A DNA stretch of 50,635 nucleotides, from the NCBI RefSeq assembly GCF_001194135.2, contig NC_068985.1, positions 124,155,996 to 124,206,630 of the forward strand. Direction: 5' to 3'. Position numbers and translations under genes: made by a program. This DNA comes from Octopus bimaculoides. Lineage: Eukaryota. Numbering within the stretch: the stretch's first letter is position 1; every line of letters begins with the position of its first letter. The notes under the pieces were generated by a model that worked only from the letters and a program-made list of their open reading frames with translations, did not search any database and had not been told where the DNA came from. Of the stretch, positions 11,530 through 50,392 are shown in pieces.

Positions 11530-11944
11530 ACTCATTTACTTACGTGTTTCAGTCATTTTGACTGCGGCCATGCTGGAGCACCGCCTTTAGTTGAGCAAAT
11601 CGACTCCAGGACTTATTCTTTGTAAGCTTAGTACTTATTCTATCGGTCCTTTTTGCCGAACCGCTAAGTTACAGGGATGTAAACACACCAGCATCGGTTG
11701 TCAAGCGATGTTGGGGGACAAATACAGACACACAAACATATACACCTATACATATACACACACATATATATACATATATACGACGGGCTTCTTTCAGTTT
11801 CCGTCTACCAAATCCAATCACAAGTCTTTAATCGGCCCGAGGCTATAGTAGAAGACACTTGCCCAAGATGCCACGCAGTGGGACTGAACCCGGAATCAAT
11901 GTGGTTGGGAAGCAAGCTACTTACCTCGCAAGCCACCCCTACGC
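11530..11944 (-). mobile_element. SINE family B, full length
   Basis: Reverse complement carries tggcttgcgaggtaagtagc head, B-box gggttcagtccc, catcttgggcaagtgtc and the 3' tail ggcggtgctccagcatggccgcagtc. Confidence 0.9.
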
Positions 11945-21180: not shown

Positions 21181-21532
21181 TCCTTTACTCCTTTACTTGT
21201 TTCAAATCGATCCCAGGACTTATTCTTTGTAAGCTTATGTACTGATTGCATCGGTTCTCTTTTGCCGAACCGCTAAATTACGGGGGCGTAAACACACCAG
21301 CATTGGTTGTCAAGCGAGGTTGGGGAGACAAACACAGACACACATACATATATAAATGTACATATATACGACGGGCTTCTTTCAGTTTCCGTCTACCAAA
21401 TCCACTCACAAGGCTTTGGTCGGTCCGAGGCTAGAGCAGAAGACACTTGCACAAGGTGCCATGCAGTGGGACTGAACCCAGAACCATGTGGTTGATAAGC
21501 AAGCTACTTACCACACAGCCACTCTTGCGCCT
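21181..21532 (-). mobile_element. SINE family B with ~45-nt 3' internal deletion
   Basis: Complete head (aggcgcaagagtggctgtgtggtaag) and body; lacks attcgact...aaatgact relative to the 37.7-kb copy. Confidence 0.9.
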
Positions 21533-26579: not shown

Positions 26580-26759
26580 TTTCGGGGAGTGGATAAATCG
26601 ATTACATCGACCCGTGTTCAACTGGTACTTATTTTATCGACCGCGAAAGGATGTAAGGCAATGTCGACCTTGGTAGAATTGGAACTCAGTGCGTAAACAC
26701 GGACTAAATGCCGTTAAGCATTTCGCCTGGAGTGCTAACGATTCTGCCAGCTCAGCGCC
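26580..26759 (-). mobile_element. SINE family A (3'-truncated)
   Basis: Reverse complement reads ggcgctgagctggcagaatcgttagcac...gagttccaatt...gtcgataaaataagtaccagttgaacacgggtcgatgtaatcga. Confidence 0.88.
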
Positions 26760-26780
26760 TTACCACCAACATTAAGATTA

Positions 26781-26985
26781 GTTTCAAATTTTGGCACAAG
26801 GCCAACAATTTTGGGCGAAGGAGTAAGTCGATTACATCGACCCCAGTATTTAACTGATACATATTTTATCAACGCCGAAAGGATGAAAGGCAACCTGGGT
26901 GGAACTTGAGCTCGGAACGTGAGGACGGACAAAATGTCGCTAAGCATTTTGCCCGGCGTGCCAACGATTCTGCCAGCTCACCACC
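26781..26985 (-). mobile_element. SINE family A, full length, with 14-bp flanking direct repeat
   Basis: Head ggtggtgagctggcagaatcgttggcacg, tail ttggccttgtgccaaaatttgaaac; ttaccaccaacatt at 26760-26773 and 26986-26999. Confidence 0.9.
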
Positions 26986-35185: not shown

Positions 35186-35262
35186 GTTCTTTCAACTTTC
35201 CATTTCTTGTCGAGTGTCATTCCGACACTGATCGAGTGTCTTCCCTAGGAAAGGTAAGTACC

Positions 35263-35335
35263 AGTTGAACATTGGAGTCGATGTAATCGTCTTAGACCCA
35301 CCCGTAAAATTGCTGGCCCTGTGTCAAATTATTAT
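35263..35335 (+). mobile_element. SINE family A 3' fragment
   Basis: taagtaccagttgaacattggagtcgatgtaatcg...aaattgctggccctgtgtcaaatt. Confidence 0.7.
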
Positions 35336-37722: not shown

Positions 37723-38063
37723 TGGCATCTTGGGCAAGTGTCTTCTACTATAGCCTCGGGCCGACCAAAGCCTTGTGAGTGGATTTGGTAGACGGAAACT
37801 GAAAGAAGCCTGTCGTATATATGTATATATATGTATGTATGTGTGTGTATATGTTTGTGTGTCTGTGTTTGTCCCCCCAACATCGCTTGACAACCGATGC
37901 TGGTGTGTTTATGTCCCCGTAACTTAGCGGTTCGGTAAAAGAGACCGATAGAATAAGTACTAGGCTTACAAAGAATAAGTCCTGGGGTCGATTTATTCGA
38001 CTAAAGGTGGTGCCCCAGCATGGCCGCAGTCAAATGACTGAAACAAGTAAAAGAGTAAAAGAG
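37723..38063 (+). mobile_element. SINE family B (5' part in gap)
   Basis: Body and complete tail ggtggtgccccagcatggccgcagtcaaatgactgaaacaagtaaaagagtaaaagag. Confidence 0.92.
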
Positions 38064-38594: not shown

Positions 38595-39427
38595 CATACA
38601 TACACCCACATACACACACACACCATATATACATACATACACACACGTATATACATACGTATACATGCGTGGGTACAATTATATTTAACACATTCATCGA
38701 AATATCTTTGCTGCAGAAACTATCCAGAAAGAGCAATCCTCTTTATATACATTGCACGCAAACAACACATCGCTGCTCAATGAATGACGTCACTGAATCG
38801 GAAAAGAATTGCATTTCTGCGTCTTTATGCACCATCCTGAAAGTTTAACGAATCCGTTTATATTTAAACAACAAATAGGATATCTGTCGATGTGCTCAAT
38901 GCTTGTTGCAGTCGGAAGTAATCAAAGAGAGGCGCATGAAGCAACATTGACTGAAAATAGGCGTGTACAACTATATTTAATATGTTCGTGTACACTCGAA
39001 CGTAGAAAGAACTTCGCTTCGGAAACTGACTCGCGAGAAAAGTTCTCTTCATAGCTATCTATGTGTGAAGATATAACCACATATACATACAGTAGTGGCT
39101 GTGTGGTAAGTAGCTTGCTTACCAAACACATGGATCCGGGTTCAGTCCCACTGCGTGGCATCTTGGGCAAGTGTCTTCTACTATAGCCTCGGGCCGACCA
39201 AAGCCTTGTGAGTGGATTTGGTAGACGGAAACTGAAAGAAGCCTGTCGTATATATGTATATATATGTATGTATGTGTGTGTATATGTTTGTGTGTCTGTG
39301 TTTGTCCCCCCAACATCGCTTGACAACCGATGCTGGTGTGTTTATGTCCCCGTAACTTAGCGGTTCGGTAAAAGAGACCGATAGAATAAGTACTAGGCTT
39401 ACAAAGAATAAGTCCTGGGGTCGATTT
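38595..39427 (+). repeat. Duplicate of 37003-37994 (probable uncollapsed haplotype)
   Basis: 38595-38748 matches 37003-37156 with 2 substitutions; 39156-39427 matches 37723-37994 with no difference seen; a 10-N gap sits at the junction. Confidence 0.85.
39093..39427 (+). mobile_element. SINE family B (3' part in gap)
   Basis: A-box-like tggctgtgtggtaag, B-box gggttcagtccc; same sequence as the 37.7-kb copy. Confidence 0.92.
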
Positions 39428-40212
39428 NNNNNNNNNNNNNNNNNNNNNNNNNNNNNNNNNNNNNNNNNNNNNNNNNNNNNNNNNNNNNNNNNNNNNNNNN
39501 NNNNNNNNNNNNNNNNNNNNNNNNNNNNNNNNNNNNNNNNNNNNNNNNNNNNNNNNNNNNNNNNNNNNNNNNNNNNNNNNNNNNNNNNNNNNNNNNNNNN
39601 NNNNNNNNNNNNNNNNNNNNNNNNNNNNNNNNNNNNNNNNNNNNNNNNNNNNNNNNNNNNNNNNNNNNNNNNNNNNNNNNNNNNNNNNNNNNNNNNNNNN
39701 NNNNNNNNNNNNNNNNNNNNNNNNNNNNNNNNNNNNNNNNNNNNNNNNNNNNNNNNNNNNNNNNNNNNNNNNNNNNNNNNNNNNNNNNNNNNNNNNNNNN
39801 NNNNNNNNNNNNNNNNNNNNNNNNNNNNNNNNNNNNNNNNNNNNNNNNNNNNNNNNNNNNNNNNNNNNNNNNNNNNNNNNNNNNNNNNNNNNNNNNNNNN
39901 NNNNNNNNNNNNNNNNNNNNNNNNNNNNNNNNNNNNNNNNNNNNNNNNNNNNNNNNNNNNNNNNNNNNNNNNNNNNNNNNNNNNNNNNNNNNNNNNNNNN
40001 NNNNNNNNNNNNNNNNNNNNNNNNNNNNNNNNNNNNNNNNNNNNNNNNNNNNNNNNNNNNNNNNNNNNNNNNNNNNNNNNNNNNNNNNNNNNNNNNNNNN
40101 NNNNNNNNNNNNNNNNNNNNNNNNNNNNNNNNNNNNNNNNNNNNNNNNNNNNNNNNNNNNNNNNNNNNNNNNNNNNNNNNNNNNNNNNNNNNNNATAAGT
40201 TCTGGCATATGT

Positions 40213-40250
<38 letters not shown>

Positions 40251-40524
40251 ACACACACACACACATACACACACACACTCACACTCACACACACACACAC
40301 GCACGCACACACACACACACACACCCATACACACATATATATTGTTAATGTCAGAAACTTAGAAACTTCGGGAGAACGCGAAATAATTATCTTTTGGAAC
40401 AACAAAATTCGAAGTGGATTAAGCAACTTCAACTTTATCGACCCAAAGGACTTTTTAACCCAATATTTACATGTTGTGATATATAGCGTTGTCTGCTTCC
40501 AGCTCCACCGTTCCCGAATAGAGA

Positions 40525-40653
<129 letters not shown>

Positions 40654-41616
40654 ATACACACACGCACACGACTGTATGTATATATCCTTTACTTCGTTTC
40701 CAGGAAACGTTTTTGAGCACGCTTACAAAAGCCCAGATTTCATTATGTCGGCTACGGCGTAGTGATACCAACCTGCAACAGCAGTTTTGTGGGATCGTAC
40801 CGAGCTGTGTCGACATAGCGTAGGATGATTACAGTAGAAATAATCAAAATAATTCAAGAATGGAATTTATAATTCTATCCTTAGATTATTTATATTATTC
40901 TTACTACATGTATACATGTATACATGCATGCATACATACATACATACATACATGCATACATACATACATACATACATACATACATACATACATGTATGTA
41001 TGTATGTATGTATATATTAAAGCCAGACAGTAGTGTCAATTAAATCAGTATGGTGCTTATGAACAGTAACGTTCTTCACCAATAACTGGCGTCCCCTCTA
41101 GATTTCATTTACCTAATTTCACTCGCAACAACAAAAACATCAATAATAATAAATATTTTTTAATAATAATAATAATAGAAGAAGAACATGTATTTTACCA
41201 CACACACACACCCATTATGTGTATTCATAAAGACACACATTTTAGATGCATGTATGCATATGTTAGTGTGCGGAGAAATGTATAGACACCCGTACAAACA
41301 TATGTTGGGAAATTTGCATACATGCCTAATGTGCGATCGAAATCAAAAGCACAGAGTTGCGACACGAAAATATTACGTACACAGCTATACCTGCGCTTGA
41401 TAGATTGATTGATAGGTTCATGAATGAAGCTTAGATTCGAAAATATGAGAAAATATTTTTTCGATCAATATTAAGGATATTGATTTTTTTTTTCTTCTTT
41501 TTACAATATCACATTCAGCACATTTTCGAGGATGATTATGAAAGTTGCTTGAATTGACAACTAGGCAAGAGCGTTTACACACACACACACACATACACAC
41601 ACAAACGCGCATATAA

Positions 41617-44992: not shown

Positions 44993-45030
<38 letters not shown>

Positions 45031-45073
45031 ANNNNNNNNNNNNNNNNNNNNNNNNNNNNNNNNNNNNNNNNNN

Positions 45074-45126
<53 letters not shown>

Positions 45127-46002: not shown

Positions 46003-46240
46003 TGGAAAAGTCGAGAAACTACATTTTGGCTAGGCGGATTGGTGTAGTCTTTAAAATCTTAAAATCTAAGTTTCTATAAGAGCAAAATTGCAGGCCGCAT
46101 TCTGAAACTCGTGGTCATACTTCATAATTTCCGTAAGCACAAAATACCGTAACTTGAGGTATTTGTAACGCAAGGACTACCTGTATTTATGTATGTATGT
46201 ATGTATGTATCTTTCTATCTATCTATCTATCTATCTATCT

Positions 46241-47100
46241 CGACGAGAAATTCCTAACCCACCTTTACAAGACGACGTTCGGGCCGGGAACTATGGATAA
46301 TTTCCAGAGATCCCTGGCTTGGCAATGCTATCGAGACGCACTACCAGTTCGAGAGAAGATCTACAGACACGGTTCGAAAACCACCGGACCGACCTGCCCG
46401 AGATGCGGTCAAAGCGACGAAACCGTTCTGCACGCACTCGTGCAGTGTCCAGATATTTCAGAGCTGTGGACCTTCGTCGAACGGATGTTGTCGCGTGTGG
46501 GACGAGCCCACTTATCAGCTGAGTCTACCGTGAATATTGTTCCGCCACCTTCCTTTAAACGGGAAGGAAAAACGGTTTTTGTAACACTGATAGCTATGGC
46601 AAAAGAATGCGTGTGGTGGACGCGTTTGAAAGGTCTACAAACAAACACTTTCGTCTCTGGTCAGTCCCTCGTCAACTTTTTCAAGTACCACTTGAAAAGG
46701 AGGATGAGGATAGAGAGGAAAGTGTTGTCGAATGAAAGTTTCAATAACAAATGGGTAAATGTGGCAAGAATGGTAAGAATGAAAGACGACACCATTTTAA
46801 GCATAGACTTGTAACAAAAAGAGACAAAAAGAGAGAAGGTACTTACTTTTAAAAAAAAAATGCCTGAGGTGACCGTGGTCTTTTCCGTAGGCTTTTCTCT
46901 CCACGGATAAACCTAATATGTTCCCCGTTTTTTACATCGACTGTGATACACGATCCCTATTGATCGCCCCCCACCCACGTTTCTTTTTTTTCTTCCCGCG
47001 ATCCCTTTTGATCGAAATTATCCCCCCCCCCAAGAAAAGCTCTACTTTGTAATTTGTCCATTTTCTGTATTTAGCCCTGTGTGGCTATAATAAAAAGATA
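46241..47100 (+). mobile_element. Tx1/L1-clade LINE 3' end, young (ORF2 C-terminus with zinc knuckle plus 3'UTR)
   Basis: About 190 uninterrupted codons to TAA 46812-46814, including CPRCGQSDETVLHALVQC (CCHC knuckle) and AKECVW; AATAAA at 47089-47094; (TATC)n on both sides. Confidence 0.9.
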
Positions 47101-47122
47101 TCTATCTATCTAGGACTGTATG

Positions 47123-50254: not shown

Positions 50255-50392
50255 ACTTGCTTCCAAACCACATTGTTCTGGGTTTGGTCCCATTGCGTGA
50301 CACCTTCCTCAAGTGTCTTCTACTATAGTCTCGGGCCGACGAAATCTTTGTGAGTGGATTTGGCAAACGAAAACTGAAAGAAGCCTGTCGTA
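50255..50392 (+). mobile_element. SINE family B left arm
   Basis: cttgcttccaaaccacattgttctgggtttggtccc...aagtgtcttctactatagtctcgggccgac...ctgaaagaagcctgtcg, ending in (CA)n. Confidence 0.8.

What the first reader, a model, noticed from the sequence alone, without database searches (positions are those of the whole stretch)
47060..47111. SINE family A shares a 3' stem-loop tail with a Tx1/L1-clade LINE, with swapped stem bases
Seen: the LINE ends tttagccctgtgtggctataataaaaagat, and the SINE A copy at 5182-5212 ends ttcagcccttgtgcctatagtagaaaggat (25 of 31 columns in my manual alignment). The copy ending near 7085 also matches. The LINE end folds as TAGCC-[CTGTGT]-GGCTA, while other A copies (7377, 26781 minus) fold as (T)TGGC-[CTTGT]-GCCA(A): similar loop, different but still paired stem. 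Known: shared 3' tails mark SINE-LINE partnership in 'stringent' clades (CR1, L2, RTE), whereas mammalian L1 is 'relaxed' and poly(A)-driven. Inference: an octopus Tx1-type LINE that recognises a 3' hairpin may mobilise this abundant SINE. I do not know whether this pair has been described.
Basis: partly seen in the sequence, partly recalled or inferred. Interest (0 to 1): 0.72.

Follow-up and report, generated by a model that had tools for sequence, protein, structure and literature searches.

The report
Octopod SINEs copy a LINE's 3' hairpin
A short parasitic repeat (SINE) in this octopod genome ends with the same small hairpin-plus-tail as a nearby L1/Tx1-type LINE. This is the classic sign that the SINE borrows that LINE's copying machinery; it is a known kind of partnership, but a rare one for this LINE group, and I found no description of it for octopus.

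Summary
The window carries a 5'-truncated LINE (46242-47112, +) whose ORF2 end has the zf-RVT CCHC motif.

**Tail match in the window.** The LINE's last ~30 nt are a hairpin (U-AGCC-CUGUGU-GGCU-A) plus an A-rich stretch. They align 25/30 with the tail of SINE A "type 1" copies (5186-5212, 7060-7086). No shuffle out of 3000 reaches that score.

**Relatives settle it.** In Argonauta hians, SINE families with different bodies end in 35-60 nt almost identical to the 3' end of the related LINE (score 39, 0/3000 shuffles). Four full-length copies have 12-15 bp target-site duplications.

**Stem pairs covary.** 85% of cells pair, against 73% when shuffled. Pair 3 is C-G in six octopod-type LINEs. It is G-C in three decapod-type LINEs and in SINE A "type 2".

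**The "swapped-stem" type 2 tail.** It is not significantly like the window LINE. It resembles a second LINE lineage seen in cuttlefish.

**LINE clade.** It is L1-group by domain architecture and closest solved structure. The Tx1 assignment is by elimination only; no RT tree was made.

**Best reading.** A stringent-type L1/Tx1 LINE whose 3' hairpin is parasitised by octopod SINEs. This is a new member of a known kind, and I found no description of it in the literature I could search.

The parts
46214..46241 (.). (TCTA)n microsatellite abutting the 5' junction of the truncated LINE copy. It is the same repeat unit as the LINE's own 3' terminal (ATCT)n.
   Evidence: Read directly.
46242..46814 (+). 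C-terminal ~190 codons of LINE ORF2, open to the stop codon at 46812-46814. It contains the motif CPRCGQSDETVLHALVQC (CX2CX8HX4C). The copy is 5'-truncated: no RT or endonuclease domain lies upstream.
   Evidence: Frame translation. Pfam zf-RVT PF13966: 33.4 bits against a cut-off of 27.5. 71% and 55% identity to ORF2 ends from an ENA contig and from Argonauta hians.
46815..47099 (+). LINE 3'UTR. It is homologous along its length to the 3'UTR of a related LINE copy (L001), up to 4 nt before the terminal hairpin. No SINE body lies inside it.
47072..47087 (+). Terminal hairpin U-AGCC-[CUGUGU]-GGCU-A (5 bp, 6-nt loop). It is followed by the A-rich stretch UAAUAAAAAGAU (47088-47099).
   Evidence: It is part of the minimum-free-energy fold of the tail.
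47100..47112 (+). Terminal short repeats (ATCT)3A of the LINE copy. The Argonauta SINEs and LINE copy L004B end in a single ATCTAT.
5054..5212 (+). SINE A copy with a type 1 tail. Hairpin region 5186-5198 (AGCC cttgt GCCT, with C x C at pair 3), then tail ATAGTAGAAAGGAT, then (TAT)n from 5213.
6881..7086 (+). SINE A copy with a type 1 tail (hairpin region 7060-7072, AAAT cttgt GATT).
7443..7700 (+). Two more type 1-like tails. One is a full copy at 7443-7644 (hairpin region 7618-7630). The other is a 5'-truncated tail-only copy at about 7655-7700 (7669-7681), followed by (TTG)n.
6658..6869 (+). SINE A copy with a type 2 tail (6842-6854, TGGC tttgt GCCG). It is the first member of a head-to-tail cluster of five copies spanning 6658-7700, and is preceded by (ATT)n.
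7196..7402 (+). SINE A copy with a type 2 tail (7376-7388, TGGC cttgt GCCA, then AAATCTGAAACC), followed by (TGT)n.
26778..26982 (-). SINE A copy with a type 2 tail (hairpin 26792-26804 on the minus strand). A second, tail-less copy lies at 26580-26754 (minus strand), 23 bp downstream in the same orientation.
2433..2530 (+). 5'-truncated SINE A copy with a type 2 tail (2505-2517, TGGT tctgt GCCA).
35252..35328 (+). 5'-truncated SINE A copy with a type 2 tail (35314-35326, TGGC cctgt GTCA).

Best explanation
**What it is.** The element at 46242-47112 is a 5'-truncated copy of an L1-group (most likely Tx1-clade) LINE of octopod cephalopods.

**The LINE's 3' module.** The RNA of this LINE family ends in three parts:
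- a short GC-rich 4-5 bp stem with a CUUGU-type loop;
- about 12 purine-rich nucleotides;
- one or more short terminal repeats (AUCU or AUU).

**What the SINEs do.** SINE A in the window, and at least two SINE families with different bodies in Argonauta, have acquired the last 35-60 nt of that 3'UTR as their own tail.

**Inferred mechanism (the 'stringent' model).** The LINE's ORF2 protein recognises the hairpin and its 3' flank on the RNA. It nicks the target with its APE endonuclease. The terminal repeats anneal to the T/A-rich nicked strand. Target-primed reverse transcription then copies either the LINE RNA or a SINE RNA that presents the same tail.

**The swapped-stem tail.** The TGGC/GCCA variant (type 2) most likely comes from a second, related LINE lineage that carries GGC/GCC in the same hairpin.

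**Shown versus inferred.**
- Shown: sequence sharing, position at the extreme 3' end, covariation of stem pairs, target-site duplications.
- Inferred: protein recognition of the hairpin, priming on the repeats, and that this LINE family rather than another is the active mobiliser.
For: 1. **Window.** The type 1 SINE tail against the LINE end gives 25/30 identities. 0/3000 shuffles reach it, z = 7.7.
2. **Argonauta hians.**
   - The S1 and S2 SINE consensus tails against LINE copy L004B score 39 and 34 (0/3000 shuffles, z 17.6 and 12.5). The S1 alignment spans about 60 nt.
   - S1 and S2 have unrelated bodies but the same tail.
   - A third tail variant (GGCC/GGCC) occurs in three further Argonauta copies whose bodies I did not characterise. 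It matches L004B best (z 12.5); a JGI LINE copy, L062, carries the same GGCC/GGCC stem (z 8.3).
3. **The motif ends the LINE 3'UTR.** It closes the 3'UTR in 6 octopod-type LINE copies from the window, Argonauta, and ENA and JGI contigs. A homologous hairpin sits near the 3' end of 3 decapod-type copies: Acanthosepion, ENA and JGI.
4. **Covariation across all tails.** On 35 tails, 85% of cells pair against 73.1 +/- 2.2 shuffled (0/500). The covariation score is 0.413 against 0.206 (0/500), and 0.01-0.13 for slid partners. Pair 1 takes GU, AU, GC and UA forms. Pair 3 takes CG and GC.
5. **Covariation among LINEs only.** Pair 3 is C-G in 6 copies and G-C in 3 (17/5000 shuffles).
6. **Structure prediction.** RNAalifold predicts only this helix in the tails. 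It is in the minimum-free-energy fold of 5 of 6 tails.
7. **TSDs.** Four full-length Argonauta S1 copies have 12-15 bp target-site duplications, two of which begin with the element's own terminal (C)TAT.
8. **LINE architecture.** ORF1 has a CX2CX4HX4C knuckle; there is an APE domain, an RT domain, and a zf-RVT CCHC motif. The best solved-structure match is human L1 ORF2p at 5e-22, against R2 at 1e-13.
Against: - The window offers only 9 SINE tails and 1 LINE end.
- Type 1 copies have a C x C mismatch at pair 3, and copy 5212 does not fold the hairpin.
- The hairpin is short, and its folding z-scores are not significant alone (-0.5 to -1.65).
- Within the octopod-type set there are only one-sided changes. 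The double-sided changes come from one SINE subfamily and one LINE clade split, so they represent few independent events.
- The type 2 tail is not significantly similar to any octopod LINE end that I could obtain. Some type 2 and type 1 copies are followed by (TTG)n, a tail repeat reported for RTE-clade LINEs and their SINE partners in plants (PMC3747384).
- I could not screen LINEs of other clades (RTE, CR1, Dong-R4), which are abundant in octopus (PMC13282606).
- The host species of the ENA and JGI contigs are unknown.
Confidence: 0.72

Rival explanations
1. Fossil tail. The SINE tail did derive from this LINE family, but the SINE is or was amplified by a different LINE (for example an RTE or CR1 element), or by relaxed recognition of the terminal microsatellite alone. 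On this reading the hairpin is a relic, not a recognition element.
For: - Type 1 copies carry a mismatch in the stem, and copy 5212 does not fold it.
- Copies are followed by varied microsatellites: (TAT)n, (TGT)n, (TTG)n.
- RTE, CR1 and Dong-R4 LINEs are abundant and recently active in octopus (PMC13282606).
- The type 2 tail has no significant match to octopod LINE ends.
Against: - Three different SINE tail variants in Argonauta each track a LINE tail variant closely.
- Two SINE families with unrelated bodies independently carry the same tail.
- Stem pairs stay complementary across variants.
- The 98% identical S2 copies lie beside a LINE that has open reading frames with only one frameshift, which suggests concurrent recent activity.
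Confidence: 0.15
2. Primary-sequence motif, not structure. The conserved GCC-CTTGT-GGC block is recognised (or merely inherited) as linear sequence, and the apparent covariation reflects a few lineage-specific substitutions counted many times.
For: - The stem is only 4 bp, and its folding z-scores are not significant.
- RNAalifold finds no double-sided change within the octopod-type set.
- The G-C state at pair 3 is found in one SINE subfamily and one LINE clade, so it may reflect only one or two events.
Against: - The four positions that differ between the Argonauta tail (GGCC..GGCT) and type 2 (TGGC..GCCA) are exactly the two members of pairs 1 and 3, and both stay paired.
- Pair 1 occurs as A-U, G.U, G-C and U-A.
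- The distant copy L065 keeps a 4-bp stem (CGGC/GCCG) with a different loop.
- Slid-partner controls are far lower.
Confidence: 0.2
3. Reverse direction or chimera. The LINE copies end in a captured SINE fragment, or a SINE inserted next to the LINE end, so the LINE is not the source of the tail.
For: SINEs and LINEs of these families do insert head-to-tail next to each other's tails.
Against: - The motif lies at the same distance from conserved 3'UTR blocks in every LINE copy, with no SINE body present.
- L001's 3'UTR is collinear with the window's up to 4 nt before the stem.
- A homologous hairpin is present in cuttlefish-type LINEs. SINEs are reported as scarce in decapod cephalopods (PMC8967140).
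Confidence: 0.04
4. Chance resemblance of two AT-rich 3' ends.
For: The regions are short and AT-rich.
Against: 0/3000 shuffles reach the score in the window. The z-score is up to 17.6 in Argonauta, and the match recurs in independent loci and species.
Confidence: 0.01

Closest known systems
Stringent-type SINE/LINE pairs with a common 3' tail. Examples are eel UnaSINE1/UnaL2 (L2 clade) and many CR1, L2 and RTE pairs (Ohshima et al. 1996; Kajikawa and Okada 2002, as reviewed in PMC3747384).
   Same: The SINE's 3' end copies the last tens of nucleotides of the LINE 3'UTR. There is a stem-loop near the end, followed by short terminal repeats, and TSDs are present.
   Different: The LINE here is of the L1 group, where such pairs are rare. 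The stem is very short (4-5 bp). There is no experimental assay.
L1-clade tail-sharing pairs in plants and a green alga: the maize/sorghum SINEs with a monocot L1 lineage, and Chlamydomonas SINEX-3_CR with L1-1_CR (Ohshima 2012, PMC3472496).
   Same: An L1-group LINE with a conserved 3' end, a hairpin with compensatory changes and conserved loop residues, shared with SINEs.
   Different: Those are plant or algal elements that end in poly(A). This one is an animal element with AUCU/AUU terminal repeats. [quoted passage not shown]
Crocodilian SINEU mobilised by Tx1-Mar LINEs (Kojima 2015, PMC4494074).
   Same: A SINE proposed to depend on a Tx1-clade LINE in an animal.
   Different: That link rests on a shared target site (a Mariner transposon) and on shared snRNA-derived 5' ends. 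No LINE matching the SINEU 3' region was reported there (PMC4758252). Here the link is a shared 3' tail.
Microsatellite-targeting Tx1 elements: Kibi and Koshi in fish, and crocodilian Tx1 families in (TTCC)n/(TTTC)n (Kojima and Fujiwara 2004, as cited in PMC4494074).
   Same: The window LINE copy sits in a (TCTA)n repeat that matches its own terminal repeat. Copies cluster head-to-tail at each other's repeat tails.
   Different: Target specificity is not established here. The Argonauta S1 copies have ordinary, varied TSDs.
Octopus SINEs OK, OR1 and OR2 (Ohshima and Okada 1994), and the tRNA-Core / tRNA-Deu SINEs that dominate octopus repeat annotations (PMC8967140).
   Same: Same host group. 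These are abundant SINEs of a few hundred bp, described as tRNA-derived.
   Different: I could not obtain those consensus sequences, so identity of SINE A with any of them is untested. None of the octopus repeat papers I read names a LINE partner.

Membership tests
L1-group (L1/Tx1) non-LTR retrotransposon | N-terminal APE-type endonuclease followed by an RT domain in ORF2 | tested here: met
   This is not in the window copy, which is 5'-truncated. It was tested in the Argonauta relative L002: Exo_endo_phos at 5e-11. RVT_1 was found on relatives P0005-P0007.
L1-group (L1/Tx1) non-LTR retrotransposon | C-terminal cysteine-histidine (CCHC) motif in ORF2 | tested here: met
   Window 46242-46811 gives zf-RVT at 33.4 bits against a cut-off of 27.5. 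The motif is CX2CX8HX4C.
L1-group (L1/Tx1) non-LTR retrotransposon | Closest to L1 ORF2p among characterised RTs | tested here: met
   PDB search: human L1 ORF2p at 5e-22, against R2 proteins at 1e-13 or worse. The PDB holds no CR1, RTE or L2 RT, so this is a weak discriminator.
Tx1 clade specifically | RT-domain phylogeny grouping with Tx1 references rather than L1 proper | not tested
   No named Tx1 or L1 reference sequences were obtainable. Support by elimination:
- Octopus and mollusc repeat surveys list L1-Tx1/Tx1 as the only L1-group LINEs they mention (PMC13282606, PMC10294476).
- ORF1 has a CCHC knuckle and no Pfam L1 ORF1 (Transposase_22) hit.
Tx1 clade specifically | Target-sequence preference | tested here: inconclusive
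   For:
- The window copy lies in (TCTA)n.
- There is a strong excess of head-to-tail neighbours: at least 4 seen against 0.107 expected, P about 5e-6.

Against:
- The Argonauta S1 TSDs are varied.
Stringent-type LINE with SINE partner | The extreme 3' end is conserved among LINE copies and shared with a SINE | tested here: met
Stringent-type LINE with SINE partner | 3' stem-loop supported by compensatory changes | tested here: met
   (the last predicts the helix). There are few independent events, so the support is moderate.
Stringent-type LINE with SINE partner | The 3'UTR or hairpin is required for retrotransposition, and the SINE tail is mobilised in trans | not testable with these tools
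   Needs a retrotransposition assay.
SINE (Pol III-transcribed, tRNA-derived) | tRNA-related head with A and B boxes | tested here: inconclusive
   ARAGORN and Rfam find no tRNA in the copies. B-box-like GTTCGAATCC / GAGTTCAAATTCC and an A-box-like segment are visible by eye only.
SINE (Pol III-transcribed, tRNA-derived) | Short, non-coding, dispersed multi-copy element with TSDs and a LINE-derived tail | tested here: met
   There are about 15 copies or fragments of 60-215 bp in the window. TSDs of 12-15 bp flank four Argonauta S1 copies.
CORE-SINE superfamily | Central CORE domain shared with MIR | tested here: not met
This is a weak test, but I do not file SINE A as a CORE-SINE. From memory its core looks more like the Deu/Nin-DC type (untested).

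The most novel reading that the evidence does not exclude
Coleoid cephalopod L1/Tx1-group LINEs are ancestrally 'stringent'. They would recognise a small CUUGU-loop hairpin at their RNA 3' end that has been kept, with compensating stem changes, since before octopods and decapods split (about 220 Myr, PMC9795677). Different sub-lineages of this LINE, not the RTE element highlighted in brain studies, would then have driven the octopod-specific SINE explosion (SINEs are about 11.6% of the O. vulgaris genome), each SINE subfamily tracking its LINE's hairpin variant. This would be an animal counterpart to Ohshima's plant evidence that stringent recognition is ancestral in the L1 clade.
Probability: 0.35. 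Interest if true: 0.7.

Novelty: new member of a known kind. Interest (0 to 1): 0.5.

Why it matters
**Octopod genomes.** SINEs are among the largest components of octopod genomes, and their expansion is octopod-specific. None of the octopus repeat papers I could read names the LINE that moves them. A shared tail points to a concrete candidate: L1/Tx1-group LINEs, which are reported as recently active in O. vulgaris. It also gives a testable RNA element.

**LINE biology.** For LINE biology more widely, it would add an animal example of 3'-sequence-specific ('stringent') template recognition in the L1 group. That group is otherwise known for poly(A)-driven 'relaxed' recognition. This bears on which mode is ancestral.

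Tried and rejected
1. **Metagenome scan for more SINE copies.** I scanned metagenome contigs with an 18-nt SINE-body pattern, chosen to be unbiased for the tail. All 54 hits were chance matches; none is a SINE by nhmmer.
2. **Bacterial/archaeal and viral contig scans.** I searched bacterial/archaeal genome contigs and viral contigs for host-contaminant LINE or SINE copies. Nothing was found.
3. **Look-up of P0009.** This LINE fragment is annotated as a Herbaspirillum MAG protein. It is not on record.
4. **Contigs that end too early.** L001, L006 and L061 stop before the LINE 3' end.
5. **CORE-SINE idea for SINE A.** Not supported by alignment to a remembered MIR consensus. I dropped it.
6. **tRNA and Rfam searches on SINE heads and the LINE 3'UTR.** No meaningful hit.
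7. **Thermodynamic significance of the hairpin.** Not significant on its own.
8. **Covariance model of the tail.** It only re-found its training copies plus a few extra Argonauta fragments. There were no new families in the window.
9. **MAFFT on tails with different loop lengths.** It put the stems out of register. I therefore used loop-padded, equal-length tails for the pair count and my own table for the LINE-only set.
10. **Octopod member of the decapod-type LINE lineage.** This would be the predicted partner of the type 2 tail. The third protein search returned no named octopod member. The last look-up gave a third lineage of unknown host.
11. **Naming the LINE clade from database names.** Nearly all relatives are unnamed.
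Full report
**What is at the coordinates.**
- Bases 46242-46814 (+) are an open reading frame with no internal stop. It encodes the last ~190 residues of a LINE ORF2, including CPRCGQSDETVLHALVQC.
- That region matches Pfam zf-RVT above its cut-off.
- Upstream there is only microsatellite, (TATG)n then (TCTA)n, so the copy is 5'-truncated.
- The stop codon at 46812-46814 is followed by a 285-nt 3'UTR.
- The 3'UTR ends ...uuuAGCCcuguguGGCUauaauaaaaagau at 47099, then (ATCT)3A to 47112.
- The closest proteins are ORF2 ends from short ENA contigs (71-74% identity) and from the octopod Argonauta hians (55%).

**The observation.**
- Nine SINE A tails are readable in the window, and they fall into two types.

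| Type | Tail | Copies (tail ends near) |
|---|---|---|
| 1 | ...aaauuuc AGCC cuugu GCCU auaguagaaaggau(uau)n | 5212, 7086, 7644, 7700 |
| 2 | ...aaauugu UGGC cuugu GCCA aaauuugaaacc | 2530, 6869, 7402, 26778 (minus strand), 35328 |

- Type 1 against the LINE end gives 25 identities in 30 columns. No shuffle out of 3000 reaches that score, and z is 7.7 with the repeats included.
- Type 2 against this LINE end is not significant (score 7).
- No other sequence in the window shares the tail.

**Relatives make the case.**
- Locus L002 from Argonauta hians holds a nearly full-length relative. It has:
  - an ORF1 with a CX2CX4HX4C knuckle;
  - an ORF2 with APE, RT and zf-RVT domains and a single frameshift;
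  - a 3'UTR ending ...uuu UGCC cuugu GGCU aauaaaagaaauaa(uua)4.
- Locus L004 holds a second copy (AGCC aggu GGCU). Just downstream lies a 5'-truncated third copy, L004B, which ends GGCC cuugu GGCU aauaaagaaaucuau.
- The same two loci contain two SINE families with different bodies:
  - S1 is about 240 bp, and its core is homologous to that of SINE A.
  - S2 is about 160 bp, with a different tRNA-like head.
  - Both end ...uucuguguuc GGCC cuugu GGCU aauagagaaaucuau.
- S1 against L004B aligns over about 60 nt with a score of 39 (0/3000 shuffles, z 17.6). S2 scores 34.
- A third Argonauta tail variant, GGCC/GGCC, is seen on three further copies whose bodies I did not characterise. It matches L004B best (z 12.5); LINE copy L062 from a JGI contig has the same stem, GGCC cuugu GGCC aauaaaagaaauc(auu)n (z 8.3).
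- The LINE 3'UTRs are collinear up to the hairpin and contain no SINE body. The tail therefore belongs to the LINE.

**The hairpin.**
- I compared 35 tails: 6 LINE ends, 9 window SINE tails and 20 Argonauta SINE tails. Loops were padded with N so that the stems stay in register.
- The 4-bp helix is paired in 85% of cells, against 73.1 +/- 2.2 in column shuffles (0/500).
- The covariation score is 0.413, against 0.206 for shuffles (0/500) and 0.01-0.13 when partners are slid.
- Pair 1 occurs as G.U, A-U, G-C and U-A. Pair 3 occurs as C-G and G-C.
- RNAalifold on unpadded tails predicts this helix and nothing else. Within the octopod-type set it sees only one-sided changes.
- The helix is in the minimum-free-energy fold of five of six tails. 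The z-scores (-0.5 to -1.65) are not significant alone, and copy 5212, which has C x C at pair 3, does not form it.
- The evidence for structure is therefore comparative and moderate. The double-sided changes trace to few events.

**Two LINE lineages, two tail types.**
- A more distant relative (35% identity to the Argonauta LINE's ORF2 C-terminal half) comes from the cuttlefish Acanthosepion pharaonis (L063). Another comes from an ENA contig (L064, which carries two tandem copies).
- Both have, about 35 nt from the end of a ~0.7-kb 3'UTR, CGGC cuugu GCCA cauuuguac.
- A third lineage (L065, JGI) has CGGC uugac GCCG at the homologous place.
- Among the nine LINE ends, pair 3 is C-G in the six octopod-type copies and G-C in these three (17/5000 shuffles).
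- The window's type 2 SINE tail (UGGC cuugu GCCA aaauuug) matches these decapod-type ends (z about 4.8) but no octopod-type end (z below 2).
- The 'swapped stem' is therefore most simply inherited from a second LINE lineage, rather than evolved inside the SINE.
- I could not find that lineage in an octopod. This remains a prediction.

**Insertion signatures.**
- Four full-length Argonauta S1 copies have 12-15 bp TSDs. Two of them begin with the element's own terminal (C)TAT, which fits annealing of the nicked target to the RNA end.
- The window LINE copy has (TCTA)n at its 5' junction and (ATCT)3 at its 3' end.
- Copies cluster head-to-tail:
  - five SINE A copies of alternating tail type lie at 6658-7700, preceded by (ATT)n;
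  - two lie at 26580-26982 (minus strand);
  - three S2 copies in L002 are followed within a few bases by the 5' end of the full-length LINE;
  - two S1 copies lie together in L004;
  - LINE copy B lies just after LINE copy A.
- In the window at least 4 such neighbours are seen, against 0.107 expected (P about 5e-6).
- This suggests insertion into existing repeat tails. Many Tx1 elements show such target preference (PMC4494074). It is not proof of target specificity.

**Clade.**
- The LINE is L1-group by domain order (APE, RT, CCHC) and by the best solved-structure match, human L1 ORF2p at 5e-22 against R2 at 1e-13.
- ORF1 has a zinc knuckle and no L1-type ORF1 domain.
- Octopus and mollusc surveys list L1-Tx1/Tx1 as the L1-group LINEs present, with 13 recently active families in O. 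vulgaris (PMC13282606, PMC8967140, PMC10294476).
- I made no RT tree with named references, so 'Tx1' remains an inference.

**What is known.**
- Tail sharing between SINEs and 'stringent' LINEs is textbook knowledge (PMC3747384).
- For the L1 clade it is rare. Three SINEs among more than 800 L1 families were counted, all in plants or a green alga, one with a covarying hairpin (PMC3472496).
- In animals, crocodilian SINEU was linked to Tx1-Mar by shared target, not by shared tail (PMC4494074).
- Bivalve SINE partners reported so far are CR1, CR1-Zenon, L2 and Nimb (PMC11481361).
- The octopus repeat papers I read name no SINE partner.
- I could not consult Repbase, Dfam or the 1994 paper on octopus SINEs. 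The pair may already be noted there.

**Verdict.**
- It is a new member of a known kind of system, of moderate interest to transposon biologists.
- It yields one clear prediction: an octopod LINE with a UGGC/GCCA hairpin as partner of the type 2 tail.
- It also offers a small RNA element that could be tested directly.

Noticed in passing
window 6600-7720: Five SINE A copies of alternating tail type sit head-to-tail, separated by gaps of 10-110 bp. An (ATT)n microsatellite precedes them and (TTG)n/(TGC)n follows. Similar head-to-tail pairs occur at 26580-26982 (minus strand), L002 1-362 and L004 14824-15313. This suggests insertion into earlier copies' repeat tails.
   Followed up: partly
window 3131-3170(-), 11827-11867(+), 21418-21455(+), 37729-37769(-), 39162-39202(-), 50304-50340(-), about 31400(-): A second repeat family ('B') is present, with the core ...ggcccgaggctatagtagaagacacttgcccaag.... 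It shares a 12-nt word (CTATAGTAGAAA/G) with the type 1 tail, and on its other strand it has ...aaGCcttgtGa.... From memory it resembles the CORE-type octopus SINE. Its relation to the LINE tail was not examined.
   Followed up: no
window 46872-46907: There is a second hairpin early in the LINE 3'UTR, ACCGTGG-[22 nt]-CCACGG. It is conserved as AACCGTGG...CCACGGTT in the related copy L001 (about 983-1018).
   Followed up: no
L063 12597-12625; L064 6923-6947: Decapod-type LINE ends have a second small hairpin just 3' of the first: UGUAC-uuu-GUGCA in L063 and UGUAC-ucccg-GUACA in L064. The difference is one-sided (U.G against U-A).
   Followed up: no
L064 348-13712: Two full-length LINE copies lie in tandem, head-to-tail, on an ENA contig of unknown host. 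Their sequence is identical beyond the presumed 3' end, so this looks like a tandemly duplicated unit rather than two insertions.
   Followed up: no
protein P0009: A cephalopod-type LINE ORF2 fragment (60% identical to the Argonauta LINE) is deposited as a 'zinc-binding domain-containing protein' of a Herbaspirillum MAG. This is probably host-DNA contamination of the bin.
   Followed up: no
window about 1310, about 37770, about 45030-45075: Runs of N (assembly gaps) occur here. Nearly identical flanks at about 37.74-37.90 kb and 39.18-39.33 kb suggest either a local duplication or two copies of one repeat on either side of a gap.
   Followed up: no
window 39119-40816 (-): This 565-codon ORF has no Pfam hit. 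It overlaps other long ORFs in a low-GC, repeat-rich stretch and is probably not a gene.
   Followed up: partly
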